NCBI GenBank assembly: GCA_029953675.1
Contig: JAMWBK010000002.1
Location: forward strand, 1,860,001-1,924,000
DNA length: 64,000 nt
Reading direction: 5' to 3'
From: Rhodosorus marinus CCMP1338
Lineage: Eukaryota > Plantae > Rhodophyta
The notes under the pieces were generated by a model. That model ran no database searches, was not told the DNA's origin, and saw nothing but the letters and a program-made list of their open reading frames with translations. The position numbers and the translations under genes are program-made. Positions 7,416 through 57,755 of the stretch are shown here, piece after piece. Position 1 is the first letter of the stretch; each line of letters starts with the position of its first letter.

Positions 7416-9106
7416 CTACCCGGTTGCTGAAGAGGCTGCTCTATGAAGGTTAACATAGTATCTAATTTGCTTCCGAGTATTCTGATTCTGAGGTAGTTGA
7501 TGGTAAGGTAACCATCTCAAGTCATCGGTGGTCTCACATTGGAAGTAAACGAAATATTCGTCCAGCTGAGCAGCATTCAGTCGATGCCCAAGTACTGACT
7601 TAATCTCTCTTTGTGAATAAGTGGGTAGAAACGCTGTCGTCTTAGGAGTACTTCCTGGTTCAGGTCCATTAAATTTCCGCAAGAGAGATACGTGGAAAAC
7701 GTCGTGAATGTCCTGCTTTCCTCCCAGATCCAACTTGTAAGCGACTTCTCCGATTTTTCGTAGAATCTTAAAAGGTCCAATATATCGGGGTCGAAAAACG
7801 TTTGAACCTGGAAGTTGGAGATTCTGTGTAGATAAAAGGACATAATTTCCTACTTCGTAGCTGATCTCCTTCTTTCCTCGATCATAGTAATGACGTTGAC
7901 ATTCTTGGGCGTAACGTAGGTTAGCTTTTGCGAGCAACCGTTGGTCCTGTTGTTGTTGCATCATAACTGTGGCGGCCTCAGGTAGTGGTCGGGAGGGATT
8001 TTCGCTGGCGGGAACTGTGATGTCAAAAGGTAATCTCGGATTCGCGCCATAAAGCAACTCGAAAGGCGAGAATTGCGTTGAGTCTGAAACCTGGCAGTTG
8101 TAAGCTAGCTCTGCAATTGGAAGGTCGGTCGCCCAGGTCGAGGTTGTTGAATTACATCTCAGGTATGTCTCTAACGTCTGGTTCGTTCGCTCGGTTTGTC
8201 CGTCTGTTTGCGGATGATACGCCGTGCTTAGTTTCTGCTGGATCTTCATCAGCCTCATTAATTCCTTCCAAAAATGCCCCGTGAATTTTGAATCTCGATC
8301 CGAAACAATATTTTCAGGTACCCCCGCGAACCTAATCCAATGACGCATGAATAACTTCGCGGTTGTCTGTGCAGTCGCCGTTGTCGTTGTTGGAAGGAAA
8401 CGGGCGTATTTGGAGAACCGATCGACAATGACAAGGATCGCGTCAAAGCCTTCGGTGGTCGTCGGTAAGGCCGTAATGAAATCCATAGAAATGGATTGGA
8501 ACTTACTATCAGGTATCGGCAAAGGTTGTAGCTTTCCTGCTGAGTATCGCAGTGGCTTCTGTTTCTGGCAGACTTCGCAGGTTCGTAGGACGTCTTCAAT
8601 ATCCCGCTTTAACGTCGGCCAGTAGTATTTCCGCTTTAGTAGACTGATGGTCTTCGTGATTCCGAAATGACCACCCGTAGGTTCCGTGTGGTAGCTTTCC
8701 AAAAGTTCGGGTACCATGGAGTCTGGTATACAGATTCGGTGATGCCGGTACAGGACGTCGCCCCTTCTGATAAAACCTTGCTCCCGATACTTCGGAGGAC
8801 TTTGATAGATCTCCGCAAACTCAGGGTCTTCGAGGTATGCCTGCAACCAGTCCACATCGGTCGTGATAGTGGACTCAACCATCTGTTGCACGGCATGACG
8901 ACTTAACGCATCCGCAATATTCTCCTTGCCTTTTTTATACTCTATCGTAAAGGAGAAGGGCAACAGCCGGTTGACGTAACGTGCTTGCCGTTTGGTGAGT
9001 TCCTTCTGAGAGCGAAGGAACCTCAGCGGGTGGTGGTCCGTCCGAACGGTGAATTCTGAGCCCTCCAGATACATTCTCCAATTTAGGATCGCAGCTGATA
9101 ATGCGA
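7416..9106 (-). pseudogene. Truncated pol: RNase H C-terminus, integrase (HHCC, DDE, GPY/F) and chromodomain
   Basis: Motifs WRMYLEGSEFTVRTDHHPL; YHTEPTGGHFG...CEVC; SMDFIT, DRDSKF, QTERTN; PRYIGPF..HDVFHVSLL; EIKSVLGHR..EYFVYF..RWLP. The frame is open, but its 5' end is cut at the inversion junction. Confidence 0.9.
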
Positions 9107-9552
9107 ATTTTAACAAATGCTTGATCCAGGTTGGAGAAATATCAGACTCGGAGAAATTTGATCGCTTCGTGGAAGGGTTGCAACCAGACTTCAAGAAATA
9201 TATTTACACTCAAGATATAACCACCTTCGAAGAGGCTCAGGCCCTGGCCCTTAAGATCGAAGGAGCGGACATTGCGAGTTACAGCTCAAATTCGCGTAAG
9301 GAACAGACGCCCTACGAACAACCAAAACCGGTACCAAGGGCGACTCCTGCGAGCAGACAAACCCGTTCGGGACGTCAATATCCACCAAGGACGCAAGAGC
9401 TCAACCGAAGCAAATATGCGAACATAATCTGTAACTACTGCGGCAAGACGGGCCATACCCAACGCATCTGTTGGGATAATCCTGACCGAGACATGACGGT
9501 CTCGAAATCGGCTCCGCCGCGAACGCAGCAGTTAAACGATACGCAGCAGTAA
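9107..9552 (+). pseudogene. Inverted C-terminal half of gag with CCHC zinc knuckle
   Basis: Plus-strand FNKCLIQ...CNYCGKTGHTQRICW...QQ* continues the gag seen on the minus strand, but in the opposite orientation. Confidence 0.9.
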
Positions 9553-13137: not shown

Positions 13138-14360
13138 CTAAGATTCATAGAAGAGCTTGTACTGCTCTGCGTACGCCTCATATTCTTCGAGAGTCATTTT
13201 CGCGCTCTGGTCATTTGTAACCTGGGAAAGAGGAACCTTCTCCGATCCAATGGTAATCAAAGGCTCCTCCCCACCGTGCACAGCATCATCCTCCGGCTCG
13301 TTGCCAGGCTGCGTTGTACCCTCAGCAGCGGGCCCGCTCACCACATTGGCCATAGAGTGGTATAGCGTGGGCGCGGCGTCCACGTGAGAAGTATCTCTGT
13401 CCTCGTTTTCCTTGTCCTCCTCATCCTGCACAGCCGACTGAGGTTCGTCGAGAAACCATTTAGGCTGCTGGGGGGCACCTTTGTTCTCAATAGAATTGAG
13501 ATTGCCCGCCTCGTTGTCCTCGATTTCAATGACCAGATCCATGTCGTCCTCATTGTTTGTACGTCCATCCGCCCTAGTAGCACCACCGATGACATCCTTG
13601 GGCAGCATATTTTCTGTCTCTGGGGGCGGTTGAATAGGGATTTCTACCTCGTCGAGCTGGGCGATTTTTTCAAGTAGCGGGCGGAGCTCACTCTCAAACC
13701 TATCTTTCAGGTTCTCGAGCTGCGCCTTCCGGCCCGATACATCTTCCTCCTCCAGCACCCCTTGGCACAATTGCTTTCGATTTATAGGCCTCTTGCAGAG
13801 AAATGATCCGGTAGCGTAATCGAGCAAGTCAACAACTTCCAGCACGGGATACTCCGTTCCGCACCGAGGGCACCGATAGAGAAGTTGTGACGACTTTTCT
13901 TCTGCAACCTTGTCAGCGATTTGCTTCCGTATCTTGTGTACTTTGTACTTGACAATATCAATAAAGCTTCGATAGTCTACAAACCAGTACTCCGCCGTAA
14001 CTCTGCGAGTGCGAGTCGATGATTCCGAAACCGGAATCTGAAACTCACGCTTCTGGCTATGAACGAGATCAATCGCCTTCATCTGTTTCAATGCTGCGCG
14101 AACATCCTGCCTTGGAAGATGTAGCTTGAACACAACGGTATCATCGGTAACACTGCAAAAGGGTACGACCAGGAATTCCAGAGGGATGATTGACGTAAGC
14201 TACTTGGCTCAAAGAATAACACAACACAGATACGGAAGTGAAAGGGTCAACTCAACTAATTTTTTTCCCTCAGAATCGTGTCAGTGATGACAATGAAATT
14301 GTCCTGATAGAACGCTCTCATTGTCATTCTCACCGTATCCATGACAATTCTGTCTACCAT
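13138..14360 (-). CDS. GTF2E1: Transcription initiation factor IIE alpha subunit, 2 exons (14360-14257, 14152-13138), 372 aa
   Basis: N-terminus MVDRIVMDTVRMTMRAFY; YWFVDYRSFIDIVKYK; zinc ribbon YRCPRCGTEY...FLC; acidic C-terminus ending QMTLEEYEAY-like (KMTLEEYEAY). Confidence 0.92.
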
Positions 14361-16087: not shown

Positions 16088-17272
<1,185 letters not shown>

Positions 17273-17802: not shown

Positions 17803-20800
17803 CTACCCCGCACTGGGCGGGCCACTCTTCACTATGCTTCGCAAGCCATAAACGTACGGTCCGCGCACTCCACCTTGCTTGTGCCTATCCCACTCTCCTG
17901 TGACCTCGAGCTGAAGTATTTTGCTGAAGAAGTTCTTCATCTTATAAATTTTCACCTTCGACTGATCAAACTTGCACTCCTTGTGGTACTCGTCCTTCAT
18001 GGTGCACAGCCTCACATAGTCCTTCGAGGTCGTTCGATCCACGTTTTCAGTTAGCTCGTAATATTCAGCAATAAACCTCGCAAGCGAGTAGTATTCGTCG
18101 CTTCGATTCTCGGCAATGCTTCGTAAAATTGAATTCCTATCGGCCAAAGTCAGCTTGGACTTCATCTCGCCCATGTTTTTCGCCGGCGCCGCGGCAGCCT
18201 GAGAACGTGCTGTTTACGGGAGCCAAGGGTAATCCATCGACTTCAATCAGAACTCTGGATGATTTTTTGCGAGGTAGAACAAAACAGGGTCTCCCACTTT
18301 GAACTTACGAGAATTCTTCTCCACTTTGGCTCCTCGAGCTTCGTTCTTTGGTCGCTGACGCTTTCTTCGAGGTTCATTTCTGCTGCTGCTTCCGTAACCA
18401 GCAGAAAGTGCTTTTCCTGTGTCCTCCGTTGCAACTTGTCCCATCCCTCTTCGCTCATAACCCTGCCACGACGACTCTCTGACCGACGCGCTGGGGTATG
18501 CGCTATTGCTCGGGGCTGAGGAATTGGCCTGAGCGACGTTGACTGTCGAGACGCAGTTGGGGATAAGAACTTAATTAGGACAATCATTCTCACTTTTCTT
18601 TAACCGACTGTCCGCGACTAGCAGTACTTACCACCGGGAGGTACTATGATATCCGCAGTACTTGAAGTTCCACCTGCTTGCATCGGAAAGTGCGCAGCGT
18701 AGTTTGGAACAACGGGCGCTTTGGAAAACTGCATCGTCGTGTCCGAACCCCCGCCTGAGCTTACTCCAGCGTAAGGATTACGGTGGGAATGGTAGGTTGT
18801 GCCCGACCGTGGGCTTGAGCCCACCCTTCCCAAGGTCCTAAAGGACGATGCCATGCGGAATGACTGGGACAGGTCCGGTGGGGAGGGGTCATAATGCACC
18901 ATTTGCCACAGCGAAGGCAATAGTCCAATGTTGGTGTTCGTAATCTGCTCGTTTTGGACAGGAATATGCTCCAGTTCGTCTTCCGGCCAGTCTTGAGGAC
19001 GTTCAGCGACGGCAGTCATTTTTGCACTGCAGAGAAGTACACGAAACCGAGACTTTGTTAGTCTACTTTTCCAACTCGTCGTGGTGCATTCCAGCGGTAT
19101 GATACCTCGTGCACTGTATCGCTGACCATCTAATCTTCATCTGCCTAGCAGCCTCTCGAGTGCGCTGCCTTGCCGCTGCCGTCTCTATGATCGGCATCGG
19201 ATAAGTCTCACCAAGTTTGACCCCCGCGGGCTCAAGGACTTCCTTTGGCGCCTGCGAGGGATTGTGGATGTACTGGTTCGGTAAATCTCTGAGCTCCGGA
19301 ACCCATTGACGAATGAAGAATCTTCGAGCACAAAGAAAGCCGAAGACAAAGCGAATATTAGCCGCAACTCCCAAAAGTTTTACGTGCGATCCCCCGAGGA
19401 CAACCTACCCAGTGGGGTCCTGCTTCTGGCCGACACCTGTTGGGTTCACAAGGCAGTTAACGGGGAAAGAATCCAAGTTCGAACCAAAGGACCATTGCCA
19501 CCCAAGAGCGTTCGACGCAGCTTCTCCGTCAACGAGTAAGGCAGCAAACTCAGTCACCCCGACGTGCCAAGGCAGCAGTAAATATTTTGTAACAAAGCTA
19601 GCGAGGAGATATCTGTCGAAGACGAGTTCCGGGGAGTTAATCTCCCGAGCGTGTACGAGAAGAACGCAAATTATTCGTTGCTTCTCACCTGAGGCTGTTA
19701 TGAACCCAGCCAATTTTGCGCAGCTGTCGCATTGCTGCGTCTATGATTGGGTACCCCGTTTGACCCTCCCTCCACTTGGGCAGCGTCGAAAAATCATCCG
19801 ACCAAGGAAACACGGAGAACTCAGGAACGATTGGAGCAACTGCCATCTTTGGATGAGTATAGTACATGTGATGTGCGAAGTCCCGCATGCACAGATTCTT
19901 CAAAAACGCCCTCGAGGCATCCGAGAACGCCTTTTGGCGGGATTCTTTGTCTCCCTGGCGTGCTCGAGCGAGGTTGACCTTCGATGTCTGCTGACGAACG
20001 GCGTGGTAGACCTTTCGAGGGGATATCTCCCCAAATCGTAGGTACGGGGAGAGCTTGGAAGTTCCGTTAAGATCGCGCCGACATCGCGAATCGCCAAAAG
20101 TTGGAAAAGTTTCCGTGAGGAACCGATCTAGAACCTCAAGCGCTGCTGAGGAACCAGTTTTCCATGTCTCCCGTAGGTCAGCATCGCCGGACTTGTCGGC
20201 AATCAGTTGTAAACTTTCCAGATCAACCGATTCCAACTTGGTCTCAATTCGATTCAAATGCCTCGGGGCGGAAAGCGGTGGCGGTGGTGGGGGGAGCGCC
20301 ATCCAAGCCGCCACGTACGAGGGCAATGTTTGATACACTTCGCCATTTGCGTCCTTCAAGTCCCATGGCTCCACCAACAACTCCGACTTGAATGTCGACG
20401 AGGCCACGTTTTTCTTCTTCAGCTCCGCCTGTATCTTTTCACTTATCTGCACCAGCTCCGGCTCGTACACGCGATGCCAAAAGACTGTATCGGCTCCAGT
20501 TTCCTCAACAAGTCTATCAATCTCAGTCCCGTAGGTTTTACCTGTTCTTACAGTGAGCTCGAGGCCCAGATTAGCCAAGTCCTCCGCAAGGCTCTTTAGA
20601 GAATTGTGCAGCCACCTAATCGGAATAAAGCCACGAGTGTAAATTAGTTTTCGGAAGCGCCATCGACATGAGAAAGAACGGAGCACAGACTGCAGAGTCA
20701 GAGGAACGAGTCTGATCAACATCAAACGCACCATCTTCCTGCACGACCAAGAGACCACTCCGATGGCGACCATATGAACACCGGGACGACGGGTCCCCCA

Positions 20801-21531
20801 TGTCGAGAGGCGGCAAGCAGCGCTGGGTGATCGCTTATTCTCAGATCGTGCCCTCGAAACCACACAATTGCCGGACGCCTTTGCTCCTTTGGCTTCCTTC
20901 TCGGGTAGCCCTTTCTGGTTCGCTTCTGCGGAGCCGAACTGTCCATGATCACCTTTGTGATCCGGTTCCCGTTTCCTCGTGAGGTAGAAAGGCTTCGCGA
21001 ATGTGAAGCGACGTGGGCCAAGGCCGCAAGGCTTCCCTCATTCTGATCCGAGTAAGCTCCAGAAACAGAGTACCCAGCAGAGTGCAGCATGGAATATGTA
21101 TTCGAGTTGGAAGGCACCGTTGACTGCACACCCGAGTTCACATAAGCTCCTTGTTGAACTTGCGCACCGGAATACGCTTGCGACAGGTCTTGGCCATGCG
21201 ACAGAGAATGTGACTGTACCCGGGAGGCACCCTGGCTCTGGCAGAGAGAATGGGATCGGGAGACGGACTTTGACTGCGTTCTCGAAGCGCTGTGAGAGTT
21301 GGACCTCGAGTGAGTGTGGGCAACTCCTTCGGAGCACAGATTACAAACTCTTCGCCCTGTACATCCTCCACCAAGCTGTTGACGGTTCCTGTGAGCTTCC
21401 TCATCCTCACCACTCTTTCCCCCGCCGAAGAAAATGCCTTTTTCAACGCCAACTTCATTGCCACAGGAATGTGATCCTGTAGAGGCCTTTTCATATCCAA
21501 GCAAACGCTCACTTCCGTGCTTTAAAGCCAT
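17803..21531 (-). CDS. CRY: Plant-like cryptochrome/photolyase-family protein with long N- and C-terminal extensions, 7 exons (21531-20732, 20615-19689, 19612-19409, 19321-19127 or 19106, 19026-18632, 18542-18309, 18209-17803), about 1,050 aa
   Basis: PHR motifs IVWFRGHDLRISDHPAL, TSKLSPYLRFGEISPR, WREGQTGYPIIDAAMRQL, GWVHNSLR, LPW...DG..SNALGWQW, FIRQWVPEL. All six GT-AG introns are phase-compatible and together account for ORFs 20722, 19685, 19405, 19063, 18618, 18247 and 17803. Confidence 0.88.
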
Positions 21532-38021: not shown

Positions 38022-39082
38022 ATGGATGCTACGAGATACTTGACCCGTGGATTCAGAGCACGATTACCTGTTCGCTACCTTCTGGATTCCTGTGAAGAGC
38101 TGTACGGTGACACAGGATGGAGCACCAGGCGAGCGCAAGATGAGCTTGTGGAGGTGTTACAGGGTCAAAAGGATCTCGATTCTTACTGTAGAAGTTTTCT
38201 GAGATTAGTTCTGAGGGAGATAGATCTGTGCCCGAGTGGTCGTGAGGAAATTTCAGAGGACCTTGTGACCCTCGCCGCTCACGCGTGCTCATTAAGCGTG
38301 GCCGCCGGTGACGGAACCATTGCAGAGGTTGCAGAGGCCGCATTCGAATTCGAAGTAGGTGGGGTCAAGCACGACGCCTATGTGTATATATCAAGCGCGA
38401 TGAGCGATGTTCATCTAAGAGTCTGGGACGCTGGGCTGTTCCTGTTCGAATGCATTTTGAGCAAACAGCTCGACATCTCGTCCAAACGGGTCGTTGAGAT
38501 CGGTGCAGGTGCTGGATTGAATCTCGTCGCCTTGCACCTCGCAGGAGCCCAAAGCACGATTCTTACGGACAGGAATGAAATCGCGGTTGACAATCTCGAC
38601 CGAGTCATTGAAAGAAACTCAGCCTCAAATTATGCACGCGCCAGGGTCCTGGACTTAGAGGAGGAGGACGATGCCCGACGCGCCAGCGATTTGCAAGATG
38701 CAGATGTCCTTATAGGTGCTGGTAAGCTTGACGAGCATAGTTCCTTACCAAACTGTGTTTTTGTTCCGTTGTCTAAACGAAAACAAAACCGTCTCTGATA
38801 GATATAACATACGATCCTGCTCTTGTCAAGTCCGTGGTCCGCTGCTACAGCCTCTTCCTTTCAGCCGACAAATCGAAAAGCCGATACGGGTACCTGGCAT
38901 TCACTGTTCGAAGCTCAGAGATGGTCGACCTTCTATACTCCGAGCTCCAGGCAAGGGGTCTCAAGTATTCCGATATAACGCGAGCTGTTGAAGAGAGAAG
39001 AGTACGGTTCTTGGAGTACTGCCGAACCTCCAGAACCGGAAAGCCCTCGGAGATCATATTGATAAGAATCGATCCAAGTTAA
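38022..39082 (+). CDS. METTL21/FAM86(EEF2KMT)-like protein-lysine methyltransferase, 2 exons (38022-38721, 38802-39082)
   Basis: VHLRVWDAGLFL, RVVEIGAGAGL, ILTD, LIGA|DITYDP motifs of Methyltransf_16-type enzymes. Confidence 0.85.
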
Positions 39083-47791: not shown

Positions 47792-49814
47792 ATGCAGGCA
47801 CCTGTGCTCGTGCTAAGTGAGTTGAGCGGGTTCTCCATAGATTTTCTTCTTTGTGGGTTGAGTTTTGTTGGTGTTAGGTTTTATTGACTAATCGAGCTCG
47901 TTTTTTAATTTGGTATGTGAATCGTAGATGAGCAGACTCAGCGGGATACTGGCCGTCGGGCTCAGCTGACTAATATTGCCGCGGCCAAGGTACGAGCGCG
48001 ACGATCGCTTTCTGCTGATGAATCCATCGGGCATGACTCGGTCAGATTTGGAGTTGATGCTTTTGCTAAGATCGTTTTCTTTTTTCAATTTCTGTTTAGG
48101 CGGTTTCGGAGATCATTCGGACAACACTTGGACCACGAGCAATGTTGAAAATGATCCTGGATGCTTCGGGAGGTATTGTTTTGACAAACGATGGAAATGC
48201 GATTCTCAGGGAGATCGATGTGAATCATCCCGCGGCAAAGAGCATCATAGAGCTCTCGAAGACTCAGGATGAGGAGGTCGGGGACGGAACGACATCAGTC
48301 AGCGTTTTGGCAGGCGAGCTTTTGTCGCTTTCGGAGCAGTTCCTCGAGCGGAACATCCATCCGACAGTTGTTGTGAACGGTTTCTTCCGGGCCCTCAACG
48401 ATGCAGTCGCAATCGCAGAAGAGCTCTCCATGCAGATCGATGTTAACAAACCCGGCGAACTCGACAAGGTCGTTGCAAGCTGCGTGGGAACCAAGTATGT
48501 TAGCAGATACGGTGATCTCATGGTGAAAATCGCAATCGACGCTGTGAATACAGTCAAGGTTGAAGATGGGGACCGGATAACCGCTGACTTCAAGAACTAT
48601 GCCAAGGTGGAGAAGATCCCGGGCGGGGACTTGAATGAGAGCAAGGTCTTAAGCGGAGTCATGTTCAACAAGGACGTGGTCAGTGGAACGATGCGACGAC
48701 GTATTGAAAACCCAAGAATCATTCTTCTGGATACGCCGGTGCAGTACCAGAAAGGAGAGAGCCAGACGAACATCGAGCTTACTAAAGGCGAAGATTTCCA
48801 GAGGCTGATGGAACTCGAAGAAGAATACGTCCAGAAGATCTGCGAAGACATTCTCAAATTCAACCCTGATGTGGTTATAAGCGAGAAAGGGATAAGCGAT
48901 TTAGCCCTGCACTTCTTCTCGAAGAAGAATGTCTCTTGCATTCGACGCCTGAGGAAGACTGACAACAACAGAGTTGCAAGAGCCTGTGGCGCCACCATTG
49001 TATCGAGGACAGATGAACTTAAGGTAACTCATACTCCCCGGTGTCTTCCCTTGCTTTTGCAATCTTTCAGGGTTCATATCCATTCACGTTCTTTGTTTTT
49101 GGCTCTGTTAGGAGAGTGACGTTGGCACTGGAGCAGGACTTTTTGAAGTTAGCAAGATCGGTGATGAGTACTTCACCTATGTCGTTGACTGTAAAGATGC
49201 CAAAGCCTGCTCGATAGTTCTTCGTGGCGGAAGCAAGGACGTACTGAACGAGGTGGAGAGAAATCTACAGGACGCTATGTGTGTCGCTCGGAATGTAGTG
49301 AAAAAGCCTACTTTAGTGTGCGGCGGGGGCGCAATCGAGATGGCCATCTCGCATGCGCTGATGGAGAAGAGCAAGTCTATCGAGGGCGTTGTCCAGCAGC
49401 CTTACCAGGCAGTGGCCCAGGCGTTGGAGGTTATTCCCAGGACACTGGTTGTAAGTACCTCTTTCAGAAAGTTGCTCAAACTAGATCGTTCCATGCAAGA
49501 GACTAATGCTAGCGGTATTCTGGTTTGGACGTTTGAAGGAAAACTGCGGAGCGAGCGTCGTGAGAGTTATGACTGCGCTTCGAGCAAAGCACGCCAACGG
49601 AGAAAATACAACTTTCGGAGTCGACGGCATGAAGGGTGAAGTAGTCGACATGAGAACTCTTGGCCTCTTCGAACCTCTGGAGGTGAAGACGCAAACTATT
49701 AAGACGTCCGTGGAAGCAGCAGCTATGTTGCTGCGAATCGATGATGTTGTATCTGGTATTACACGGAAACAAGATCCTGCTAGCGGCCCAGTTCAGCACG
49801 ACGATGATGATTGA
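47792..49814 (+). CDS. CCT3: T-complex protein 1 subunit gamma, multi-exon
   Basis: MQAPVLVLN|EQTQRD...TTLGPRAMLKM, TNDGNAILRE, GDGTTSV, KVEKIPGG, CIRRLRKTDNNR, LLRIDDVVSG. Confidence 0.97.
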
Positions 49815-51889: not shown

Positions 51890-53162
51890 CTACATTTCCA
51901 TCTTCTGTGCTCCGTCTTCAGCGGCTGGCGGTGCTTCAACACCTTCAGGCTTCTTCTTGTCCTTCTTCTTCTTCTTCTTCTTGTCGACTTCTTGGGCCAG
52001 GAGGTCCTTGAGGCTTTGATCTTTCACCTCCTTCTCGCTCTTCACATTCTGCGGTGGTTGAACTGATGTCACTCTTATCGTCTGTGAGGGCATAACCAGC
52101 GCAGTGTACTTGATCCTGCCCACAATTTCGCCCTCCTTTTCGTACAGAACCGGGTAGCCGACAACGAGGCCGTGCGTCAGCAGTTCGGTCATACCCAACT
52201 TGCACTTCTGCTCATCTGAAAGAGCCCTCAGGGCAAACGGAAGGGCGGGGGACTTTGTATTGATTTCGCTGAATACTTGTCTAGAAGCCTTCATCTTCAA
52301 CATGTACTCGACATCCACCTGCCTCTTAAAAACCGTCGAACGTACTCTCGCCTCTTTCAGCTTGCCTTCCCCTGTGCTCATCGCAATGTCGATCGCATAG
52401 ACTTCGTTCTCCTCAAATTTAATATCTTCGACCCTGTGCTCATAAGTAGGCTTCCCAATAATGGCCTGAAAGTTCGTCCAGAAGAACAGCGTCGGATTAG
52501 AGCTGGTCCATACCTGAGCACTTCCTTCCGGGCTGTTGAGCAAACAATCGCGGACTTACCTTATTACCATCAATTACATATCGCTTCATTTGGTGACTAA
52601 GCGATCCTTCTACAACTTCCACGCCGAAATCGATTGCGGCTCTGTTAATGATCTCTGTCACGTCATAATTAGTCTTTCCAGGGCGTAAGGCTCTTAGAAC
52701 TGCCTCCCCGGCAACATACGCGGCCATCAGCGCGTCTGCTGCTTTACCAGTCAGTTCCTCATTCCCTACAACAACGCTGCGAGCAGCAAGGGCAATATAT
52801 CCATCAATGTGGCAACCAAGGTCGATTGAAATAATGTCCCCATCCTTAAGCACGGTTGGGTCATCGGACATCGGCGAAAAATGGCAGACACAGTTGTTCA
52901 CTGATACACATGTCGGAAACCCAACTCCCTTCTCAATCTTATCCCCCTTCTCCGTCCTGGCCTTATTGTAAACCCCAGCGGTGCTCTCGGTAATCACAGA
53001 ATCGCCCAGCGCGCACAAGCTCACCACATCAACCCCAGCAGCAACCTTGGCGGACACAGCCGCAATCGCCTTATCCGCAATCTCCGCCGCAGTCTTATAC
53101 TTATTCACAACATCAGGCGATCCAACGCTCTTCTCCTCCTCAACCTTATCCTCCTCTTCCAT
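51890..53162 (-). CDS. PA2G4: ErbB3-binding protein 1 / proliferation-associated 2G4 (MetAP-like fold), 2 exons (53162-52560, 52465-51890)
   Basis: DVVNKYKTAAEIA, GVGFPTCVSVNNCVCHFSP, IDLGCHIDGY, SHQMKRYVIDG, EVYAIDIAMSTGEGK; Lys-rich tail. Confidence 0.95.
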
Positions 53163-54170
53163 CTTGCTTCTACCCTTCCAAAACACCCAAACCAAAAAAA
53201 AATTCCAAGAACCAGTATACCAAATCACCTCTCACTCCCTACCCATTCTCCCACCAACCTCAACAGAGAAAGCTTCACTCTCTAAATATGTCAATCTAAA
53301 CCCTTTTCCATTCCCAATCTTAAAACCTCACCCCCCCTCCTCCCCCCTTTCCTCCCCCCCTCTTTCTCAAAACCAAAATTCACCATCTACAGCTTGATGA
53401 TCTTTTATCAATCCAATCGTCTTCGAAACCCTTTTTTCCCGTACCCCTCAAGAGATGCCTTCTAAACCATTAGATTGAAAAAACTAAAGATAATCAAAAC
53501 TGGGTTTTCGACCCAAGGTGGGTGGGGGGTTGGGGGGTGTTTTCCCGTCTTCAAACCCCGCGTCGACGACCGAGATGGTCAATCAATATAAATACTTATT
53601 TCATATATATTTTCTTGTTGGCAATCAATAATGGTAGTGCGTTTCCGTAGATGGGATAATGGATGCACGAAGAGAAACAAGCATGTTGACCTTTTTCGGG
53701 GGTATTCGGTTGGGGGCCTGTTGTGTTGTGTTGTGGGCTGCAGCGGGACGCGTGAGGATTACGAATATGATCGTACTCGTAGGTTAACATCCTCGAAGGA
53801 TGTTTACCTCCCACAGGATGCTAGCGCCCACTCCTTGCGCCCCGCTAGCATCCTCTGGGAAGACTGCGTTGAAAAGACCGCCTTCTGAGCTGGTTGATGC
53901 AGTGCTTGGCTTTCTTTTCAACGAGGTAGTTTCCCAGTGGAAACAACTTCTTTCGTACGCTGCGTTTTCGCTTCTCCATGTGGTCGTGGGGTGTTTCACA
54001 TATTCGTTTTTAAGTGATATAGTTTATTCTCATTTTACGTTTTCCCGTTGCTGGGATTGACGCACATATGCACCCAACTAATATAGTCAAGGCGCTGATT
54101 AATTTGGAATTATTGCAAAAAACGTTCTACAACCGTGGCACGTGAAAACTCCCGCTCTGATCTTCTCTAT

Positions 54171-57100
54171 CTACCAGTAAGTGAAATCTCGCACCCACCC
54201 TCCAAGCCGACTGTTTGCAGGTGGGTCACCCCGGCGAATCCAGAACTTCCTGTGCTCGTCATAGACCACCTCGAACATGGCAAACGGTATTCCAGGGAGC
54301 CAGTGCAGTCCGTAGAGACTCGCTGTGCCAAACGCATCATTGATCGGAGGAATGTATGTAAGCAGCACAGCCAAACAGATCTCAGAGAAGATTCCAACGT
54401 CCAACACATAGTTCTTCATGCCCTGCTGGAAGAGTGACAATTTCCTCGTCTTGCAGATCAAGCCACCACCAATTTGTGAAATGACAATGGACACGAAGAA
54501 AGCACCCTGCGCGTGCTGCAGAGTATCAGACTGCTGTTCGATTGTCCACGAGTCGAAGCATCCAGTTCCAGCCGGCTGATCATCAATGTCAGTAATTTCG
54601 ATGACATTAGGGTTGGCCTCCCCGGTATTCACTCCATAGTAGTATACCATCGGGGTAACAGTTTCTCCACTTGAATTGGTGAAATTCCCCTGGAAGAAGC
54701 AGGTGTCATAATCGTTGAAAATCTGATTGTTGTTCTCATCGAGGCAGACGAACGCCAAGCAAGGAGGCTGGAACAACACCTGTCCAATGGCCTTGATCAT
54801 GTTGTTAAACTGATCACTACCAGGAATTCCGGAGATTCCTTCAAGCCCGTCAGGAGGTGAATCCGTTGCTGTCCGCGGAATCTGGTCGAACTGAGTTGTA
54901 GTCTGCAGAATGAAGCCATCTGCCGGCGGAGAATTGTAAACGAAATCGAAAACCCCGTCACCTGCAAACTCTCCGTCGTCGAAGTACTGACCGGACATGA
55001 CTTGAGCTGTTGCCGAAAACCTTCGTGTGTACCACCATCTCTGCAAGTCCTCGAATTTGGAACCCCACTGGTTCCTCTGAGATAGACCCGGCAAGACGCG
55101 AGGAGCGACTGCGTAATCGTTCAACACGACGCAATACACGAAGAATCCGCATGAAGCCTGAATGACTCCAATCTGCGCATACGAAAACGAGATCAACCTC
55201 CTGTTCACGAGTCGGTCAAGCTTCATATCGCGAGGATAGCGAAGCATTATGTCGCTCTCTGCTTTCTCGTACGCGAACGAAATTGCCGGCAACATGTCAG
55301 TTCCGAGGTCAATGAGCAGGATCAAGATAGTTGTCAGCGGCTGCGGGATTCCGAGAATGACGTGCATCAGGAACGGAGTGATTTCCGGGATGTTCGACGT
55401 CAAGGTGTACGCAATCGACTTCTTCAAGTTGTCGAAGATGAGACGGCCTTCCTCAACTCCTTTCACGATAGAGGAGAAGTTGTCATCCAACAAGATCATA
55501 TCGGCGGCCTCCTTCGACACGTCTGAACCAGCGATACCCATGGCGATACCAATGTGCGCCTTCTTCAGGGCCGGCGAATCGTTCACTCCATCTCCAGTCA
55601 CAGCAACGATCTTTCCAAGCCGCTGGCAGTTCTCTACAATGATGAGTTTCTGTTGCGGGGATGTACGCGCAAAAACAATCTGGTTGTTCGCAAGGGCACG
55701 GTCCCAATCCGGCTCATCGAAGTCCTTGATCTGCGATCCCGGAATGACAATGGCATTCACTTCACTGCGATCCACCTCCTCCAGCGGAATTCCACGCTCC
55801 TCAGCAACATCTTCCGCAGTGCGATCGCTGATGATGTTCACCTGCTGAGCAATCGCCTTTGCAGTTGCTGGATGATCGCCAGTGACCATGATAACCTGAA
55901 TACCAGCGGTCTGGCACGTTTCCACGGCTCCTGGTACAGACTCTCGTGGTGGATCAAGCAAAGCCATCAGCCCAACGAAAGTCAAACCATCGAGTGGGAA
56001 GTTAAGTTCATCCCCATCGAACACAAAACCTTCTTCGAACATTTCCGGATACTCTTTCTGAGTTAGGGTGAGCTGTGCAAACCCTAGGACTCGCTCTCCT
56101 CCATTCATCATCTTCTGGAGCAGGTTGGTGGTCTGCGTCGAATCATCCTCCGACATTGGTTTTTCCTCACCCTGGAGGTAGATCTTGTCGCACCGCTCCA
56201 AAATCCTCTCAGGTGCGCCCTTCATGAGCAGCCTGTAGTCACCGGGAGACTCGGAGTCCTTGTGAATCGTGATCATGAACTTGTTCGTCGAGTTGAAAGG
56301 AATTCCTCCAATCACAGGATTCAGTGCTCTTGACGCCACTACTGGAGTAATCTTCTCTGAGAACTTCAGAATTCCGGCTTCTGATGCATCACCGTTCACT
56401 TTGCGTTCGTCAATCGGCAGATCTGGATTCTCCTCAAGGTCAGCCTCGTCGAAAATTGCCTTCGCGCAGTTAACAGCTCCGAAGAACAGCGTCTTGAAAC
56501 CCGGATCCTCTTCATTGTAACTTGACTCCTGAGTAGCAGTCGGAGCAGTAAACAGAGTGTGGTCATAGACCAGATGCACAATGGTCATCCTGTTCTGAGT
56601 CAGCGTCCCAGTCTTATCCGAGCAAATGGTGGTTGTCGACCCCAGCGTCTCAACTGATTCAAGCTTCTTGACAAGTACATTCTTCTTGGCCATTCGCTTC
56701 GACGTCAATGTTAAAGCCACAGTGACTGTCGCAAGTAGGCCCTCAGGTACGTTCGCCACGATAATTCCGATGCAGAAAACGATATTCTCAATCCAATCAG
56801 TTCCCTTCACAGCGTTGATGATGAAGAACAAAACTCCCAGGAAGATGGCGAAGGCAGAAATGATGAGCACGAAGTGGTGGATTTCAATCTGCATGGTCGT
56901 CTGCTCCGTCTTCGAGCTCGCCGCCAGACCCGCAATCCTTCCGAACAGTGTTCGGTCCCCAGTATTCACTACGATGCCCGTCGCTGTTCCCTCCACGGCG
57001 TTGGTTCCGAAGAATGCAATATTCCTCGTCTCCAACGGGTTTTCATCCGTGCACTCTGTTGACCGAGCCAATGGTTCCGACTCTCCAGTTAAGGAAGAAT

Positions 57101-57755
57101 TGTCCACCTTCAACTTATTGTTCACAATAAGTCGAATGTCAGCTGGAATCTTGTCTCCCAATTTCACATCAATCACGTCTCCAACAACGAGATCAGCAGC
57201 CTCACAAGAGAAGATCTTTCCATCCCTGTGAACCACAGTCTGTGGTGGAAGGAAATTCTTGAATTTCTCCATGGTCTTCTCAGACTTAAACTCCTGCAAA
57301 AAGGAGAATACGGCGGTGATGATGACGACTGTGTACAACACAATACCCAACACCAAGTTCTCCGTATCCGCCGGGTTGAGACCGTAGGCGATGAAGCAGA
57401 GAATTGACGCGACCTGCAGCAACAGCGCGAAAAAGTTGAGGAACTGCTGCAGAAGTTTGACATACCAAGCCGTAGTTTTGGGTGGCGTGAGCATGTTTGG
57501 CCCATCCTTAAGTAGCCTCTGCTTATGGTCCTCAGAGGTAAGACCCTTTTCGAGACTGGTACCAAGCTTCTCCGCCAATTCTTCGCAGGTCACTTTGTGC
57601 TCCCACATCTCAATCTCCTTCTTAAGGTCGTCATCCTTCTCTCCGTCCTTCCCTGCCTTCTGCCTCTCCAGCGTTTCGGAGACTCTCTGAGCCGTCTCCG
57701 AGTACTGGCGAACCATCTCCAGCTCGAACGACGTCTTTTTCGGTCCGTCCGTCAT
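54171..57755 (-). CDS. P-type IIC (Na+/K+-ATPase-like) alpha subunit, single exon, 1194 aa
   Basis: DNSSLTGESE, IVANVPEGLL, ICSDKTGTLTQNRM, KGAPERI, VTGDHPATA, TGDGVNDSPALKKAHIG, YTLTSNIPEI, DLGTDMLPAISFAYE; C-terminal ...FTYW. Confidence 0.97.
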   Translation of the reverse strand: MTDGPKKTSFELEMVRQYSETAQRVSETLERQKAGKDGEKDDDLKKEIEMWEHKVTCEELAEKLGTSLEKGLTSEDHKQRLLKDGPNMLTPPKTTAWYVKLLQQFLNFFALLLQVASILCFIAYGLNPADTENLVLGIVLYTVVIITAVFSFLQEFKSEKTMEKFKNFLPPQTVVHRDGKIFSCEAADLVVGDVIDVKLGDKIPADIRLIVNNKLKVDNSSLTGESEPLARSTECTDENPLETRNIAFFGTNAVEGTATGIVVNTGDRTLFGRIAGLAASSKTEQTTMQIEIHHFVLIISAFAIFLGVLFFIINAVKGTDWIENIVFCIGIIVANVPEGLLATVTVALTLTSKRMAKKNVLVKKLESVETLGSTTTICSDKTGTLTQNRMTIVHLVYDHTLFTAPTATQESSYNEEDPGFKTLFFGAVNCAKAIFDEADLEENPDLPIDERKVNGDASEAGILKFSEKITPVVASRALNPVIGGIPFNSTNKFMITIHKDSESPGDYRLLMKGAPERILERCDKIYLQGEEKPMSEDDSTQTTNLLQKMMNGGERVLGFAQLTLTQKEYPEMFEEGFVFDGDELNFPLDGLTFVGLMALLDPPRESVPGAVETCQTAGIQVIMVTGDHPATAKAIAQQVNIISDRTAEDVAEERGIPLEEVDRSEVNAIVIPGSQIKDFDEPDWDRALANNQIVFARTSPQQKLIIVENCQRLGKIVAVTGDGVNDSPALKKAHIGIAMGIAGSDVSKEAADMILLDDNFSSIVKGVEEGRLIFDNLKKSIAYTLTSNIPEITPFLMHVILGIPQPLTTILILLIDLGTDMLPAISFAYEKAESDIMLRYPRDMKLDRLVNRRLISFSYAQIGVIQASCGFFVYCVVLNDYAVAPRVLPGLSQRNQWGSKFEDLQRWWYTRRFSATAQVMSGQYFDDGEFAGDGVFDFVYNSPPADGFILQTTTQFDQIPRTATDSPPDGLEGISGIPGSDQFNNMIKAIGQVLFQPPCLAFVCLDENNNQIFNDYDTCFFQGNFTNSSGETVTPMVYYYGVNTGEANPNVIEITDIDDQPAGTGCFDSWTIEQQSDTLQHAQGAFFVSIVISQIGGGLICKTRKLSLFQQGMKNYVLDVGIFSEICLAVLLTYIPPINDAFGTASLYGLHWLPGIPFAMFEVVYDEHRKFWIRRGDPPANSRLGGWVRDFTYW

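What the first reader, a model, noticed from the sequence alone, without database searches (positions are those of the whole stretch)
17803..21531. Cryptochrome spliced to a C-terminal RFX-like winged-helix domain: candidate one-component blue-light transcription factor
Seen in sequence: seven separate ORF fragments join through six phase-compatible GT-AG introns (donors include GTAAGT twice) into one protein of about 1,050 aa. Its last exon (18209-17803) encodes LARFIAEYYELTEN...DYVRLCTMKDEYHKEC...MKNFFSKIL...GGVRGPYVYGLR. Established knowledge: the RFX DNA-binding domain reads approximately WLLDNYE...VSLPRSTLYxHYLxHC...FGKLIRSVF...GTRGNSKYHYYGLR, and the same fold occurs in D5/P4-primase C-terminal winged helices. 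The helix spacing and terminal GxRG..YxYGLR wing line up by eye. Basic NLS-like patches flank the PHR (KRTRKGYPRRKPK, PRRKRQRPK). Characterised cryptochromes signal through partner proteins. Inference: this could be a photoreceptor with its own DNA-binding domain, a red-lineage analogue of aureochromes.
Basis: partly seen in the sequence, partly recalled or inferred. Interest (0 to 1): 0.88.

Follow-up and report, generated by a model that had tools for sequence, protein, structure and literature searches.

The report
Red-algal cryptochrome carrying an RFX-like domain
This red-alga gene joins a blue-light-sensing cryptochrome to a conserved C-terminal domain predicted to fold like the DNA-binding domain of RFX transcription factors, so the light sensor may bind DNA directly, although nobody has tested this.

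Summary
The window is Rhodosorus marinus nuclear DNA, and the gene is the annotated NDN08_007876 (1,021 aa, 8 exons, minus strand 21494-17803).

The last exon belongs to the gene. Its roughly 105-aa domain lies at the extreme C-terminus of photolyase-homology proteins in every named source, all of them red algae (Cyanidioschyzon PHR3, Galdieria, Porphyridium, Chondrus, Gracilariopsis pCRY1). Two complete transcript ORFs from relatives carry both parts.

The domain matches nothing by sequence in Pfam, PDB or PHROGs. A profile comparison with RFX is not significant. Two independent AlphaFold models (pLDDT 83.5 and 88.6) give a winged helix. The best PDB neighbour both times is the RFX5 DNA-binding domain (probability 0.99 and 0.96, TM 0.66). 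The best viral neighbours are D5-type primase-helicase proteins.

Five of nine RFX1 DNA-contact residues fall on near-invariant identical residues.

The photolyase-homology region keeps the Trp triad but lacks the CPD-pocket Glu and Trp.

Best reading: a nuclear cryptochrome with its own DNA-binding module. DNA binding and light control are inferred, not shown. I found no prior description.

The parts
21269..21494 (-). Exon 1 of the annotated model, starting at ATG 21494.
   Evidence: The 8-exon join translates exactly to P0003. The choice of N-terminus is unresolved.
20732..21188 (-). Exon 2: low-complexity N-terminal extension, basic patch, and start of the photolyase-homology region (PHR) up to ..GRAGRW|W
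   Evidence: The RWWLHNSL motif is restored across the intron.
19689..20615 (-). Exon 3: most of the PHR alpha/beta domain and the start of the FAD-binding domain
19409..19612 (-). Exon 4: FAD-binding core, including SNALGWQW
19106..19321 (-). Exon 5: end of the PHR.
   Evidence: RWSAIQ aligns with RWSLVQ of the paralog.
18632..19026 (-). Exon 6: disordered linker carrying the conserved GLLPSLW motif
18309..18542 (-). Exon 7: linker ending in the basic patch PRRKRQRPK. Donor GTAAGT.
18210..18308 (-). Intron 7 (99 nt, GTAAGT...CAG), which separates the linker from the winged-helix exon. Read-through would stop after ..NSRKFKVGDPVLFYLAKNHPEF.
   Evidence: A related transcript (P0023) ends just upstream of the domain-coding region.
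17803..18209 (-). Exon 8, the last exon: short Ala-rich spacer, the winged-helix domain, and stop TAG at 17805-17803
20288..20871 (-). DNA_photolyase alpha/beta domain (PF00875), residues 182-337 of P0003. It spans intron 2.
   Evidence: Pfam E 1.9e-40; coordinates
19144..19906 (-). FAD_binding_7 domain (PF03441), residues 465-664. It spans introns 3 and 4.
   Evidence: Pfam E 1.5e-65; coordinates
19492..19515 (-). SNALGWQW: Asn at the FAD-N5 position (AtCRY1 D396, E. coli N378) and the proximal Trp of the triad
   Evidence: Alignments to 1u3c, 4u63 and 6lz3
20887..20925 (-). Basic patch KRTRKGYPRRKPK, NLS-like, just before the PHR
   Evidence: Sequence. Function not tested.
18897..18926 (-). 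GLLPSLWQMV short conserved motif in the C-terminal extension
   Evidence: A strict regex finds it in 19 of 44 long family members, including Cyanidiales and Florideophyceae
18346..18372 (-). Basic patch PRRKRQRPK, about 30 aa upstream of the winged helix
   Evidence: The upstream 80 aa are strongly basic in most homologs.
17839..18153 (-). Conserved C-terminal RFX-like winged-helix domain, residues 906-1010: extra N-terminal helix, H1, beta-hairpin, H2, H3, beta2, wing, beta3
   Evidence: Alignments A1 and A3; AF2 models; Foldseek
17839..17907 (-). Wing segment EVTGEWDRHKQGGVRGPYVYGLR, the most invariant stretch of the family
   Evidence: Invariant columns. They map onto RFX1 wing contacts R57, G60, R62 and Y67 (PMC12311785).

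Best explanation
NDN08_007876 is a red-algal member of the plant-CRY / class III photolyase branch of the cryptochrome-photolyase family.

Its N-terminal photolyase-homology region (PHR) should bind FAD and be photoreducible through an intact Trp triad. A long disordered linker follows. It carries a conserved LLPSLW motif and a basic patch. The protein ends in a roughly 105-aa winged-helix domain of the RFX / D5-primase structural type.

Most likely mechanism:
- The protein is nuclear.
- The winged helix binds duplex DNA mainly through its beta-hairpin wing (the invariant R...GGVRGPYVYG stretch), as RFX domains do.
- Blue-light photoreduction of FAD changes how effectively the protein engages DNA or recruits the transcription machinery. 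This could happen by releasing the C-terminal part from the PHR, or by PHR oligomerisation that brings several winged helices together.

That would make it a one-polypeptide light-to-gene switch.

Shown here: the gene model, the domain architecture, its conservation across Rhodophyta, and the predicted fold. Inferred: FAD photochemistry, nuclear localisation, DNA binding and light dependence.
For: Gene model and fusion:
- The 8-exon join reproduces the annotated 1,021-aa protein exactly.
- The 3' end converges on a polyubiquitin gene about 530 bp away.
- An HMM search of 1.84 billion representatives finds only 62 proteins. In all of them the domain lies within about 60 residues of the C-terminus.
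- Every true hit longer than 600 aa also has a PHR. The single exception is P0079, a weak repeat-sequence artefact.
- The MMETSP complete ORFs P0007 and P0017 carry both the PHR and the domain.

PHR:
- PF00875 E 1.9e-40 and PF03441 E 1.5e-65.
- The best PDB relatives are plant CRY1/CRY2 and Agrobacterium PhrA (E about 1e-94).
- W324, W377 and W400 equivalents are kept.
- The E. coli E274 and W277 equivalents are N and M, as expected for a cryptochrome rather than a CPD photolyase. The same holds in the orthologs.

Domain:
- 21 invariant columns among 25 sequences.
- AF2 pLDDT 83.5 / pTM 0.73 for the window sequence, and 88.6 / 0.80 for the Gracilariopsis sequence. Both have H1-beta-H2-H3-beta-wing-beta topology.
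- Both models have RFX5 (8zjr_M) as top PDB hit: probability 0.99 and 0.96, TMt 0.66, rmsd about 4 A. All other hits have probability 0.28 or less and are mostly winged helices (Fur, Cdt1, ESCRT-II, ASFV PrimPol).
- BFVD top hits are phage and giant-virus DNA primase, D5 primase-helicase and SF3 helicase proteins, with probability up to 1.0.
- In the collinear hhalign alignment (70 of 76 RFX columns, 26% identity), RFX1 contacts R19, R57, G60, R62 and Y67 (listed in PMC12311785) fall on the same residue. These are kept in 54-62 of 62 family members. R58 maps to H or R, and K45 to K or R in 38 of 62.
- Enrichment of identities at contact columns gives p about 0.003. This test was post hoc.
- Net charge is +4 on average, concentrated in H3 and the wing.
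Against: - There is no significant sequence link to RFX. None of the 25 members hits Pfam PF02257.
- hhalign probability is 1.8-2.9%. Its score is matched by 10 of 300 column shuffles and by the reversed profile.
- The R19 mapping depends on where a gap is placed.
- Foldseek E-values (0.011-0.11) are above the usual cut-offs. RFX1 (1DP7) is never listed.
- The H3 contacts K45 and R48 are variable, and K66 is deleted.
- The wing loop is longer than in RFX and is modelled with low confidence (pLDDT below 50 to 77).
- Many winged helices bind proteins, not DNA.
- The residue next to FAD N5 is Asn, as in photolyases, not the Asp of plant CRYs. The photocycle is therefore uncertain.
- A transcript of a related gene (P0023) ends just before the domain.
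- There is no experimental evidence of any kind for this protein family.
Confidence: 0.55

Rival explanations
1. The C-terminal winged helix is a protein-protein or oligomerisation module, as in the cullin WHB, ESCRT-II and Cdt1 winged helices. The receptor would then signal through partners (for example a COP1-type ligase) like other cryptochromes, without touching DNA.
For: Lower-ranked Foldseek hits include protein-binding winged helices: ESCRT-II, Cdt1 and cullin WHB. The H3 positions equivalent to RFX K45 and R48 are not conserved. Net charge is lower than in RFX (+4 against +6 to +9). A COP1 homolog exists in red algae (PMC10853006).
Against: The top structural neighbours are DNA-binding winged helices: RFX5, Fur, and primase-helicase proteins. 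The invariant residues are Arg, Gly and Tyr in the wing, and they coincide with RFX DNA contacts. A basic tract precedes the domain in most homologs.
Confidence: 0.2
2. The protein is a DNA-repair photolyase, or a dual-function enzyme. The winged helix would simply tether or target it to DNA or chromatin to improve repair, not to regulate genes.
For: The PHR scores as well against the class III CPD photolyase PhrA (E 7e-94) as against plant CRYs. It keeps the photolyase-type Asn at FAD N5 and the W384-equivalent Trp (GWQW). Several database entries name homologs 'deoxyribodipyrimidine photolyase'. C. merolae CPF proteins have been reported to show photolyase activity (bioRxiv 10.1101/2021.05.23.445365, citing Asimgil and Kavakli 2012).
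Against: The substrate-pocket residues E274 and W277 (E. coli numbering), which PhrA keeps, are N and M here and N/K and L in the orthologs. This resembles AtCRY1 (S and L). A several-hundred-residue disordered extension is typical of signalling cryptochromes. The database names are automatic.
Confidence: 0.12
3. The winged helix binds DNA constitutively, as a chromatin anchor. Light acts only on what the PHR recruits, not on DNA binding itself.
For: The linker of 230-900 disordered residues makes direct allosteric coupling between the PHR and the domain hard to picture. The LLPSLW motif could be the light-regulated docking site.
Against: Nothing here argues against it. It is a variant of the main explanation and cannot be told apart in silico.
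Confidence: 0.25
4. The fusion is a gene-prediction artefact, and exon 8 is a separate small gene starting at ATG 18174.
For: An ATG-initiated 123-aa ORF exists at 18174-17803. There is no RNA evidence for this exact gene. One related transcript lacks the domain.
Against: The domain is C-terminal to a PHR in all long true homologs from at least 11 red-algal genera, many of which have few introns. The complete transcript ORFs P0007 and P0017 contain both parts. Hits without a PHR are short. The one checked (P0033) starts about 380 bp from a contig end in all three contigs shown.
Confidence: 0.02

Closest known systems
Plant cryptochromes CRY1/CRY2 (e.g. Arabidopsis 1U3C, 6K8I)
   Same: The PHR is as similar as to any solved structure (E about 1e-93 to 1e-87, full length). 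The Trp triad is conserved, the CPD-pocket Glu and Trp are lost, and there is a long disordered C-terminal extension.
   Different: The FAD-N5 residue is Asn instead of Asp396. No DAS motif was found: no DQxVP or STAES. The extension ends in a folded winged-helix domain that plant CRYs lack.
Class III CPD photolyase (Agrobacterium PhrA, 4U63)
   Same: Equal PHR similarity (E 7e-94). It shares the Asn at N5 and the GWQW / NWQW motif.
   Different: PhrA keeps E and W in the ..KEIVWREF.. substrate pocket, where this protein has N and M. PhrA has no C-terminal extension or winged helix.
RFX DNA-binding domain (PF02257; RFX1 1DP7, RFX5 8ZJR)
   Same: Best PDB structural neighbour of two independent models (TMt 0.66, probability 0.96-0.99). 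Same H1-beta1-H2-H3-beta2-wing-beta3 order. The wing pattern R..G.RG..Y.YG(L/I)R is shared, and 5 of 9 DNA-contact residues are kept.
   Different: It does not reach any Pfam score, and hhalign probability is 3% or less. It has an extra N-terminal helix, a 7-residue beta-hairpin insertion and a longer wing loop. K66 is absent and the H3 contacts are variable. RFX factors are reported only from opisthokonts and amoebozoans, with rare exceptions (PMC10530576).
D5 / P4-type primase-helicase proteins of phages and giant viruses (ASFV PrimPol 8IQH, mimivirus, Bodo saltans virus, virophage SF3 helicases)
   Same: Best BFVD structural neighbours (E 0.011-0.1, probability up to 1.0) and recurrent PDB hits.
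   Different: No sequence similarity (PHROGs: nothing above noise). Here the domain is attached to a flavin photosensor, not to a primase or helicase.
Aureochromes (LOV + bZIP), fungal WC-1 (LOV + GATA zinc finger), bacterial EL222 (LOV + HTH)
   Same: Same logic: a flavin photosensor and a DNA-binding module in one polypeptide.
   Different: The sensor here is a PHR with non-covalent FAD and electron transfer, not a LOV domain. The DNA-binding module is a winged helix. Sensor and DNA-binding module are separated by hundreds of disordered residues. Function is untested.
Red-algal 'pCRY' genes already listed in surveys (C. merolae PHR3 BAM80957; G. chorda Gc-pCRY1 PXF43553.1; the unassigned red-algal branch next to PCRY in PMC9498864)
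   Same: These are orthologs or paralogs of the window gene and contain the same C-terminal domain.
   Different: The papers I could read treat them only as cryptochrome/photolyase family members and do not mention the C-terminal domain.

Membership tests
Cryptochrome/photolyase family | N-terminal alpha/beta photolyase domain (PF00875) | tested here: met
   E 1.9e-40, 139 bits against a cut-off of 26.6
Cryptochrome/photolyase family | FAD-binding helical domain (PF03441) | tested here: met
   E 1.5e-65, 220.9 bits, profile positions 1-202 of 203
Cryptochrome/photolyase family | Electron-transfer Trp triad (AtCRY1 W324, W377, W400) | tested here: met
   All three align to Trp in the 1u3c alignment
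Plant cryptochrome subfamily (CRY1/CRY2) | Asp next to FAD N5 (AtCRY1 D396) | tested here: not met
   Asn in SNALGWQW, as in PhrA and E. coli photolyase
Plant cryptochrome subfamily (CRY1/CRY2) | DAS motif (DQxVP, acidic stretch, STAES) in the C-terminal extension | tested here: not met
   No DQxVP or STAES in P0003 by regex. Only these strict patterns were tried.
CPD photolyase (class I/III) | Substrate-pocket Glu and Trp (E. coli E274 and W277; PhrA ..KEIVWREF..) | tested here: not met
   The query has ..KNLCMRDF.. (N and M). Orthologs have N/K and L.
CPD photolyase (class I/III) | Light-driven repair of CPD lesions | not testable with these tools
   Needs an enzyme assay
RFX DNA-binding domain (Pfam PF02257) | Match to the family HMM above the gathering score | tested here: not met
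   No hit at E up to 10 for the window sequence or any of 25 homologs
RFX DNA-binding domain (Pfam PF02257) | Profile-profile similarity to RFX domains | tested here: inconclusive
   hhalign gives a collinear 70-column alignment at 26% identity, but probability is 2.9% with score 18. Ten of 300 shuffles and the reversed profile reach that score.
RFX DNA-binding domain (Pfam PF02257) | RFX-type winged-helix fold | tested here: met
   Two AF2 models both have RFX5 8zjr_M as top PDB hit: probability 0.99 and 0.96, TMt 0.66, rmsd 3.9-4.1 A. E-values are only 0.06-0.11.
RFX DNA-binding domain (Pfam PF02257) | Conserved DNA-contact residues (RFX1 R19, K45, R48, R57, R58, G60, R62, K66, Y67; PMC12311785) | tested here: inconclusive
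   R19, R57, G60, R62 and Y67 are kept and near-invariant. K45 is partly kept, R58 maps to H or R, R48 is variable and K66 is deleted. The mapping depends on the alignment.
RFX DNA-binding domain (Pfam PF02257) | Binding to X-box DNA | not testable with these tools
   Needs EMSA, SELEX or DAP-seq
D5/P4-type primase-helicase C-terminal winged helix | Structural similarity of the domain | tested here: met
   BFVD top hits are DNA primase, D5 primase-helicase and SF3 helicase proteins, with probability up to 1.0 and E 0.011-0.1. ASFV PrimPol and mpox E5 appear in the PDB list.
D5/P4-type primase-helicase C-terminal winged helix | Association with a primase or SF3 helicase | tested here: not met
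   The only other domains are PF00875 and PF03441
One-component light-regulated transcription factors (aureochrome, WC-1, EL222 type) | Photosensor and DNA-binding domain in one polypeptide | tested here: met
   Architecture confirmed and conserved. That the domain binds DNA is predicted only.
One-component light-regulated transcription factors (aureochrome, WC-1, EL222 type) | Light-dependent DNA binding or transcriptional output | not testable with these tools
   Needs biochemistry or genetics

The most novel reading that the evidence does not exclude
All red algae, which lack phytochromes, would carry a cryptochrome that is itself a sequence-specific DNA-binding protein. Its RFX-type winged helix would be an ancient, previously unrecognised occurrence of that fold class outside opisthokonts and amoebozoans, possibly sharing ancestry with viral primase-helicase winged helices. 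Blue light would gate its DNA occupancy or activity directly. This would be the first cryptochrome-based one-component light-to-transcription switch.
Probability: 0.4. Interest if true: 0.9.

Novelty: new variant of a known kind. Interest (0 to 1): 0.78.

Why it matters
All characterised cryptochromes act through partner proteins. A cryptochrome with its own DNA-binding domain would be a new signalling architecture for this photoreceptor family.

It would be the shortest possible path from blue light to gene expression in a lineage that has no phytochromes (PMC10853006).

It would extend RFX-type DNA-binding folds beyond opisthokonts and amoebozoans, and it bears on where that fold came from (cellular or viral).

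It makes a clear prediction that can be tested in a tractable organism: C. merolae PHR3 is an ortholog, and gene editing exists there.

It could also supply a compact cryptochrome-based optogenetic DNA-targeting module.

Tried and rejected
- Pfam scans of the C-terminal 135 aa and of 25 homologs gave only noise.
- PDB sequence searches with the single sequence and with the profile gave only chance hits: RecQ at E 1.5 and uS13m at E 0.45.
- A PHROGs scan of 25 homologs gave nothing above noise.
- hhalign against a 2-sequence and then a 9-sequence RFX alignment, and with a 62-sequence domain alignment, gave probability 1-3%. Shuffle and reversal controls showed the score is not significant. I therefore do not claim RFX family membership from sequence.
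- The last homolog search, used to deepen the RFX profile, returned mostly near-identical RFX1-3 fragments, so the profile stayed shallow.
- The word-indexed homolog search with exon 8 alone found only 2 fragments. The exhaustive HMM search was needed to see the family.
- I tried to settle the N-terminus by comparison with paralogs. The QDHIPVA / RDHLPLA match is not significant (E 11).
- I looked for a non-cryptochrome context. P0033 is cut by a contig end. P0078 is a weak, wing-less relative with no PHR in 5 kb upstream, from an unknown organism. P0079 is a repeat artefact.
- Four literature searches aimed at a prior description of the domain, or of a cryptochrome-RFX link, found none.
- I rejected the separate-gene and simple-photolyase readings, as set out under the rival explanations.


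Full report
**1. What is in the window**

The minus strand between 21531 and 17803 carries a series of ORF fragments that join through GT-AG introns.

A homolog search with the joined protein returned a 100%-identical database entry: Rhodosorus marinus hypothetical protein NDN08_007876 (P0003, 1,021 aa, Pfam PF00875 + PF03441). It is encoded on GCA_029953675.1, contig JAMWBK010000002.1.

I reproduced that protein exactly with eight exons: 21494-21269, 21188-20732, 20615-19689, 19612-19409, 19321-19106, 19026-18632, 18542-18309 and 18209-17803.

The annotation uses ATG 21494 in another frame plus an 80-nt intron. I could not resolve this. The only paralog similarity in that stretch has E = 11.
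The annotation uses AG|GTATCA at 19106. The seven extra codons (RWSAIQCT) align with RWSLVQ in a paralogous transcript, so the annotation is probably right.

**2. Does the last exon belong to the cryptochrome?**

Yes, with high confidence. The reasons are as follows.
- The gene's 3' end faces the 3' end of a five-unit polyubiquitin gene about 530 bp away.
- A profile of the domain, searched with HMMER against 1.84 billion representative proteins, found only 62 proteins. In every one the match lies within about 60 residues of the C-terminus.
- Every true hit longer than 600 aa also contains a photolyase-homology region (PHR). The single exception, P0079, is a weak repeat-sequence artefact.
- The hits without a PHR are short. 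The one I checked (P0033) begins about 380 bp from a contig end in all three contigs shown.
- Two MMETSP transcript ORFs flagged 'complete' (P0007, 795 aa; P0017, 805 aa, Rhodosorus marinus) contain the PHR and the domain in one frame. P0007 aligns with the window protein from the N-terminal extension to the C-terminus.

There are two caveats. I found no transcript of this exact gene. Another MMETSP ORF (P0023, 86% identical to P0017) stops a few codons after diverging from P0017, just upstream of the domain. The divergent tail begins with Val (a GTN codon), which is what retention of the intron preceding the domain exon would produce. A domain-less isoform may therefore exist.

**3. The photosensory part**

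- Pfam gives DNA_photolyase (E 1.9e-40) and FAD_binding_7 (E 1.5e-65).
- Against PDB sequences the PHR is about equally close to plant cryptochromes (6lz3, 1u3c, 6k8i; E 1e-94 to 1e-87) and to the Agrobacterium class III CPD photolyase PhrA (4u63; E 7e-94). It is much further from class I photolyases and from animal or DASH cryptochromes.
- In those alignments the Trp triad (AtCRY1 W324, W377, W400) is conserved.
- The residue beside FAD N5 is Asn, as in photolyases. Plant CRYs have Asp396 there.
- The two substrate-pocket residues that PhrA keeps (..KEIVWREF.., E. coli E274 and W277) are Asn and Met here (..KNLCMRDF..). Orthologs have N/K and L, which resembles AtCRY1 (S and L).
- No DAS motif was found.

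This is therefore best called a cryptochrome-like member of the plant-CRY / class III branch. It fits the 'unassigned red-algal branch next to PCRY' described in PMC9498864. Repair activity cannot be excluded in silico.

**4. The C-terminal domain**

Twenty-five homologous C-termini align with 51% mean column identity and 21 invariant columns. These are concentrated in ..DYVRLC....K.FF..L and above all ..VTGEWDRH.HGGVRGPYVYG...

Sequence methods do not identify the domain.
- No Pfam family matches the window sequence or any of the 25 members at E up to 10.
- PDB sequence and profile searches give nothing.
- PHROGs gives nothing.
The alignment is collinear over 70 of 76 RFX columns at 26% identity. 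Probability is only 2.9% (score 18).
- Ten of 300 column-shuffled profiles, and the reversed profile, reach that score.
- A 62-sequence domain alignment does no better.

Sequence similarity to RFX is therefore not significant.

Structure prediction is more informative.
- AlphaFold2 on the window sequence with alignment A1 gives pLDDT 83.5 and pTM 0.73. The core is above 93.
- An independent run on the trimmed Gracilariopsis chorda sequence gives pLDDT 88.6 and pTM 0.80.
- Both models show an extra N-terminal helix followed by H1, a beta-hairpin, H2, H3, beta2, a wing loop and beta3. This is a winged helix.
- Foldseek against 350,542 PDB chains puts the RFX5 DNA-binding domain (8zjr_M) first for both models: E 0.062 and 0.11, probability 0.99 and 0.96, TM 0.66 normalised to the target, rmsd 3.9-4.1 A.
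- All other hits have probability 0.28 or less. Most are winged helices: Fur family, Cdt1, ESCRT-II, STIV F93, ASFV PrimPol and mpox E5.
- Against the viral library the top hits are phage and giant-virus DNA primases, D5 primase-helicases and SF3 helicases (E 0.011-0.1, probability up to 1.0).

Weak points are that the E-values are modest, that RFX1 (1DP7) never appears in the lists, and that the wing loop is modelled with low confidence.

**5. Do the conserved residues make sense for DNA binding?**

PMC12311785 lists the RFX1 DNA contacts as R19, K45, R48, R57, R58, G60, R62, K66 and Y67. Under the hhalign alignment, across 62 family members:

| RFX1 contact | Residue in this family |
|---|---|
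| R19 | R in 62 of 62 |
| R57 | R in 60 |
| G60 | G in 60 |
| R62 | R in 61 |
| Y67 | Y in 54, W in 8 |
| R58 | H in 44, R in 17 |
| K45 | K or R in 38 |
| R48 | variable |
| K66 | falls in a deletion |

Identities are enriched at contact columns (6 of 8 against 18 of 70 overall, p about 0.003; post hoc and alignment-dependent). The R19 equivalence depends on gap placement. It does fit the predicted secondary-structure register, because it is the last residue of the strand before H2.

The domain is net basic (mean +4), mostly in H3 and the wing. In most homologs the preceding 80 residues are strongly basic.

In RFX1 the wing makes most of the DNA contacts (five of the nine listed). It is therefore notable that the wing is the invariant part here.

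**6. Distribution and prior knowledge**

Every family member that carries a source name is from a red alga:
- Cyanidioschyzon merolae PHR3 (BAM80957)
- Cyanidium
- Cyanidiococcus
- two Galdieria species (two paralogs)
- Porphyridium purpureum
- Rhodosorus (at least two paralogs)
- Hildenbrandia
- Chondrus crispus (CDF32158 and CDF35207)
- Agarophyton
- Gracilariopsis chorda Gc-pCRY1 (PXF43553.1)

Many Logan and ENA members are unnamed, so a wider distribution is not excluded.

On the literature:
- RFX factors are reported as essentially confined to opisthokonts and amoebozoans (PMC10530576).
- Reviews and surveys of algal cryptochromes, and the G. chorda and C. merolae papers I read, list these genes as pCRY or PHR3. 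None mentions a C-terminal folded domain.
- Targeted searches for cryptochrome plus RFX or winged helix found nothing relevant.
- The other G. chorda plant-like CRY (Gc-pCRY2) was nuclear in a heterologous system (PMC10853006). I did not verify that it carries the domain. I infer that it does, because both Chondrus paralogs do.

**7. Mechanism and rivals**

Best-supported reading (confidence about 0.55): a nuclear cryptochrome whose C-terminal RFX-like winged helix binds DNA through its wing. FAD photoreduction in the PHR would modulate DNA engagement or transcriptional output. This could work by releasing the C-terminal part or by light-induced oligomerisation that raises avidity.

The architecture, the conservation and the predicted fold are shown. 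The rest is inference by analogy with RFX and P4-type winged helices and with plant cryptochrome photoactivation.

The rivals are:
- a protein-binding winged helix with partner-mediated signalling (0.2);
- a DNA-tethered photolyase (0.12), weakened by the lost pocket residues;
- a constitutive chromatin anchor with light acting elsewhere (a variant of the main reading);
- a gene-model artefact (0.02).

**8. Verdict**

It is a new variant of known kinds, namely cryptochromes and one-component light-regulated transcription factors. It is apparently undescribed, conserved across Rhodophyta, and directly testable in C. merolae.

Noticed in passing
window 18897-18926 (P0003 residues 711-720): A short motif, GLLPSLW(S/A/Q)(L/M)..D.P(P)S, lies about 50 aa after the PHR. 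It is conserved from Cyanidiales to Florideophyceae: 19 of 44 long family members match a strict regex. It is probably a docking motif in the otherwise unalignable linker.
   Followed up: partly
P0023 versus P0017 (MMETSP Rhodosorus transcripts); corresponds to window intron 7, 18210-18308: A 681-aa 'complete' transcript ORF, 86% identical to the paralog P0017, ends about 8 residues after diverging from it, just upstream of the winged-helix domain. The divergent tail starts with Val (GTN). This looks like retention of the intron before the domain exon, so a domain-less isoform may exist.
   Followed up: partly
L001 4989-6251 (JGI metagenome 3300081713, P0078): A weak relative of the domain (E 2.7e-10) lacks the GGVRGPYVYG wing motif. 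It sits at the end of a 420-aa Q/P-rich protein, with no PHR detectable in the 5 kb upstream. The organism is unknown. This is the only possible non-cryptochrome context seen.
   Followed up: partly
window 16103-17272 (+): A polyubiquitin gene with five head-to-tail ubiquitin units, convergent with the cryptochrome. The two stop codons are about 530 bp apart.
   Followed up: no
window 7416-9194 (-): A 592-aa ORF with RNase H, integrase zinc-binding, rve core and Tf2-type SH3 domains. It is a fragment of a Ty3/gypsy-type LTR retrotransposon pol gene.
   Followed up: no
window 54171-57755 (-), 13138-14133 (-), 48142-49119 (+), 52497-53228 (-), 38022-38798 (+): Ordinary nuclear neighbours: a P-type cation ATPase (an uninterrupted 1,194-aa ORF), a TFIIE-alpha-like protein, a CCT/TCP-1 chaperonin exon, an M24 metallopeptidase exon and a lysine methyltransferase-like ORF.
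   Followed up: no
Foldseek PDB lists: RFX5 (8zjr_M) is the top hit for both models, yet RFX1 (1DP7, 37% identical to RFX5 in the domain) never appears among hits with E up to 10. This is unexplained. It may be a prefilter effect or reflect the DNA-bound conformation.
   Followed up: no
Family-wide (P0014/P0252 group versus P0061/P0063/P0026 group): Florideophyceae carry two paralogs with the domain. The second group ends in ..YVYGCVKR.. and has an insertion (..MDYNDETYGGKHWEQW..) before H1. In Chondrus this paralog is auto-annotated 'deoxyribodipyrimidine photolyase'.
   Followed up: partly
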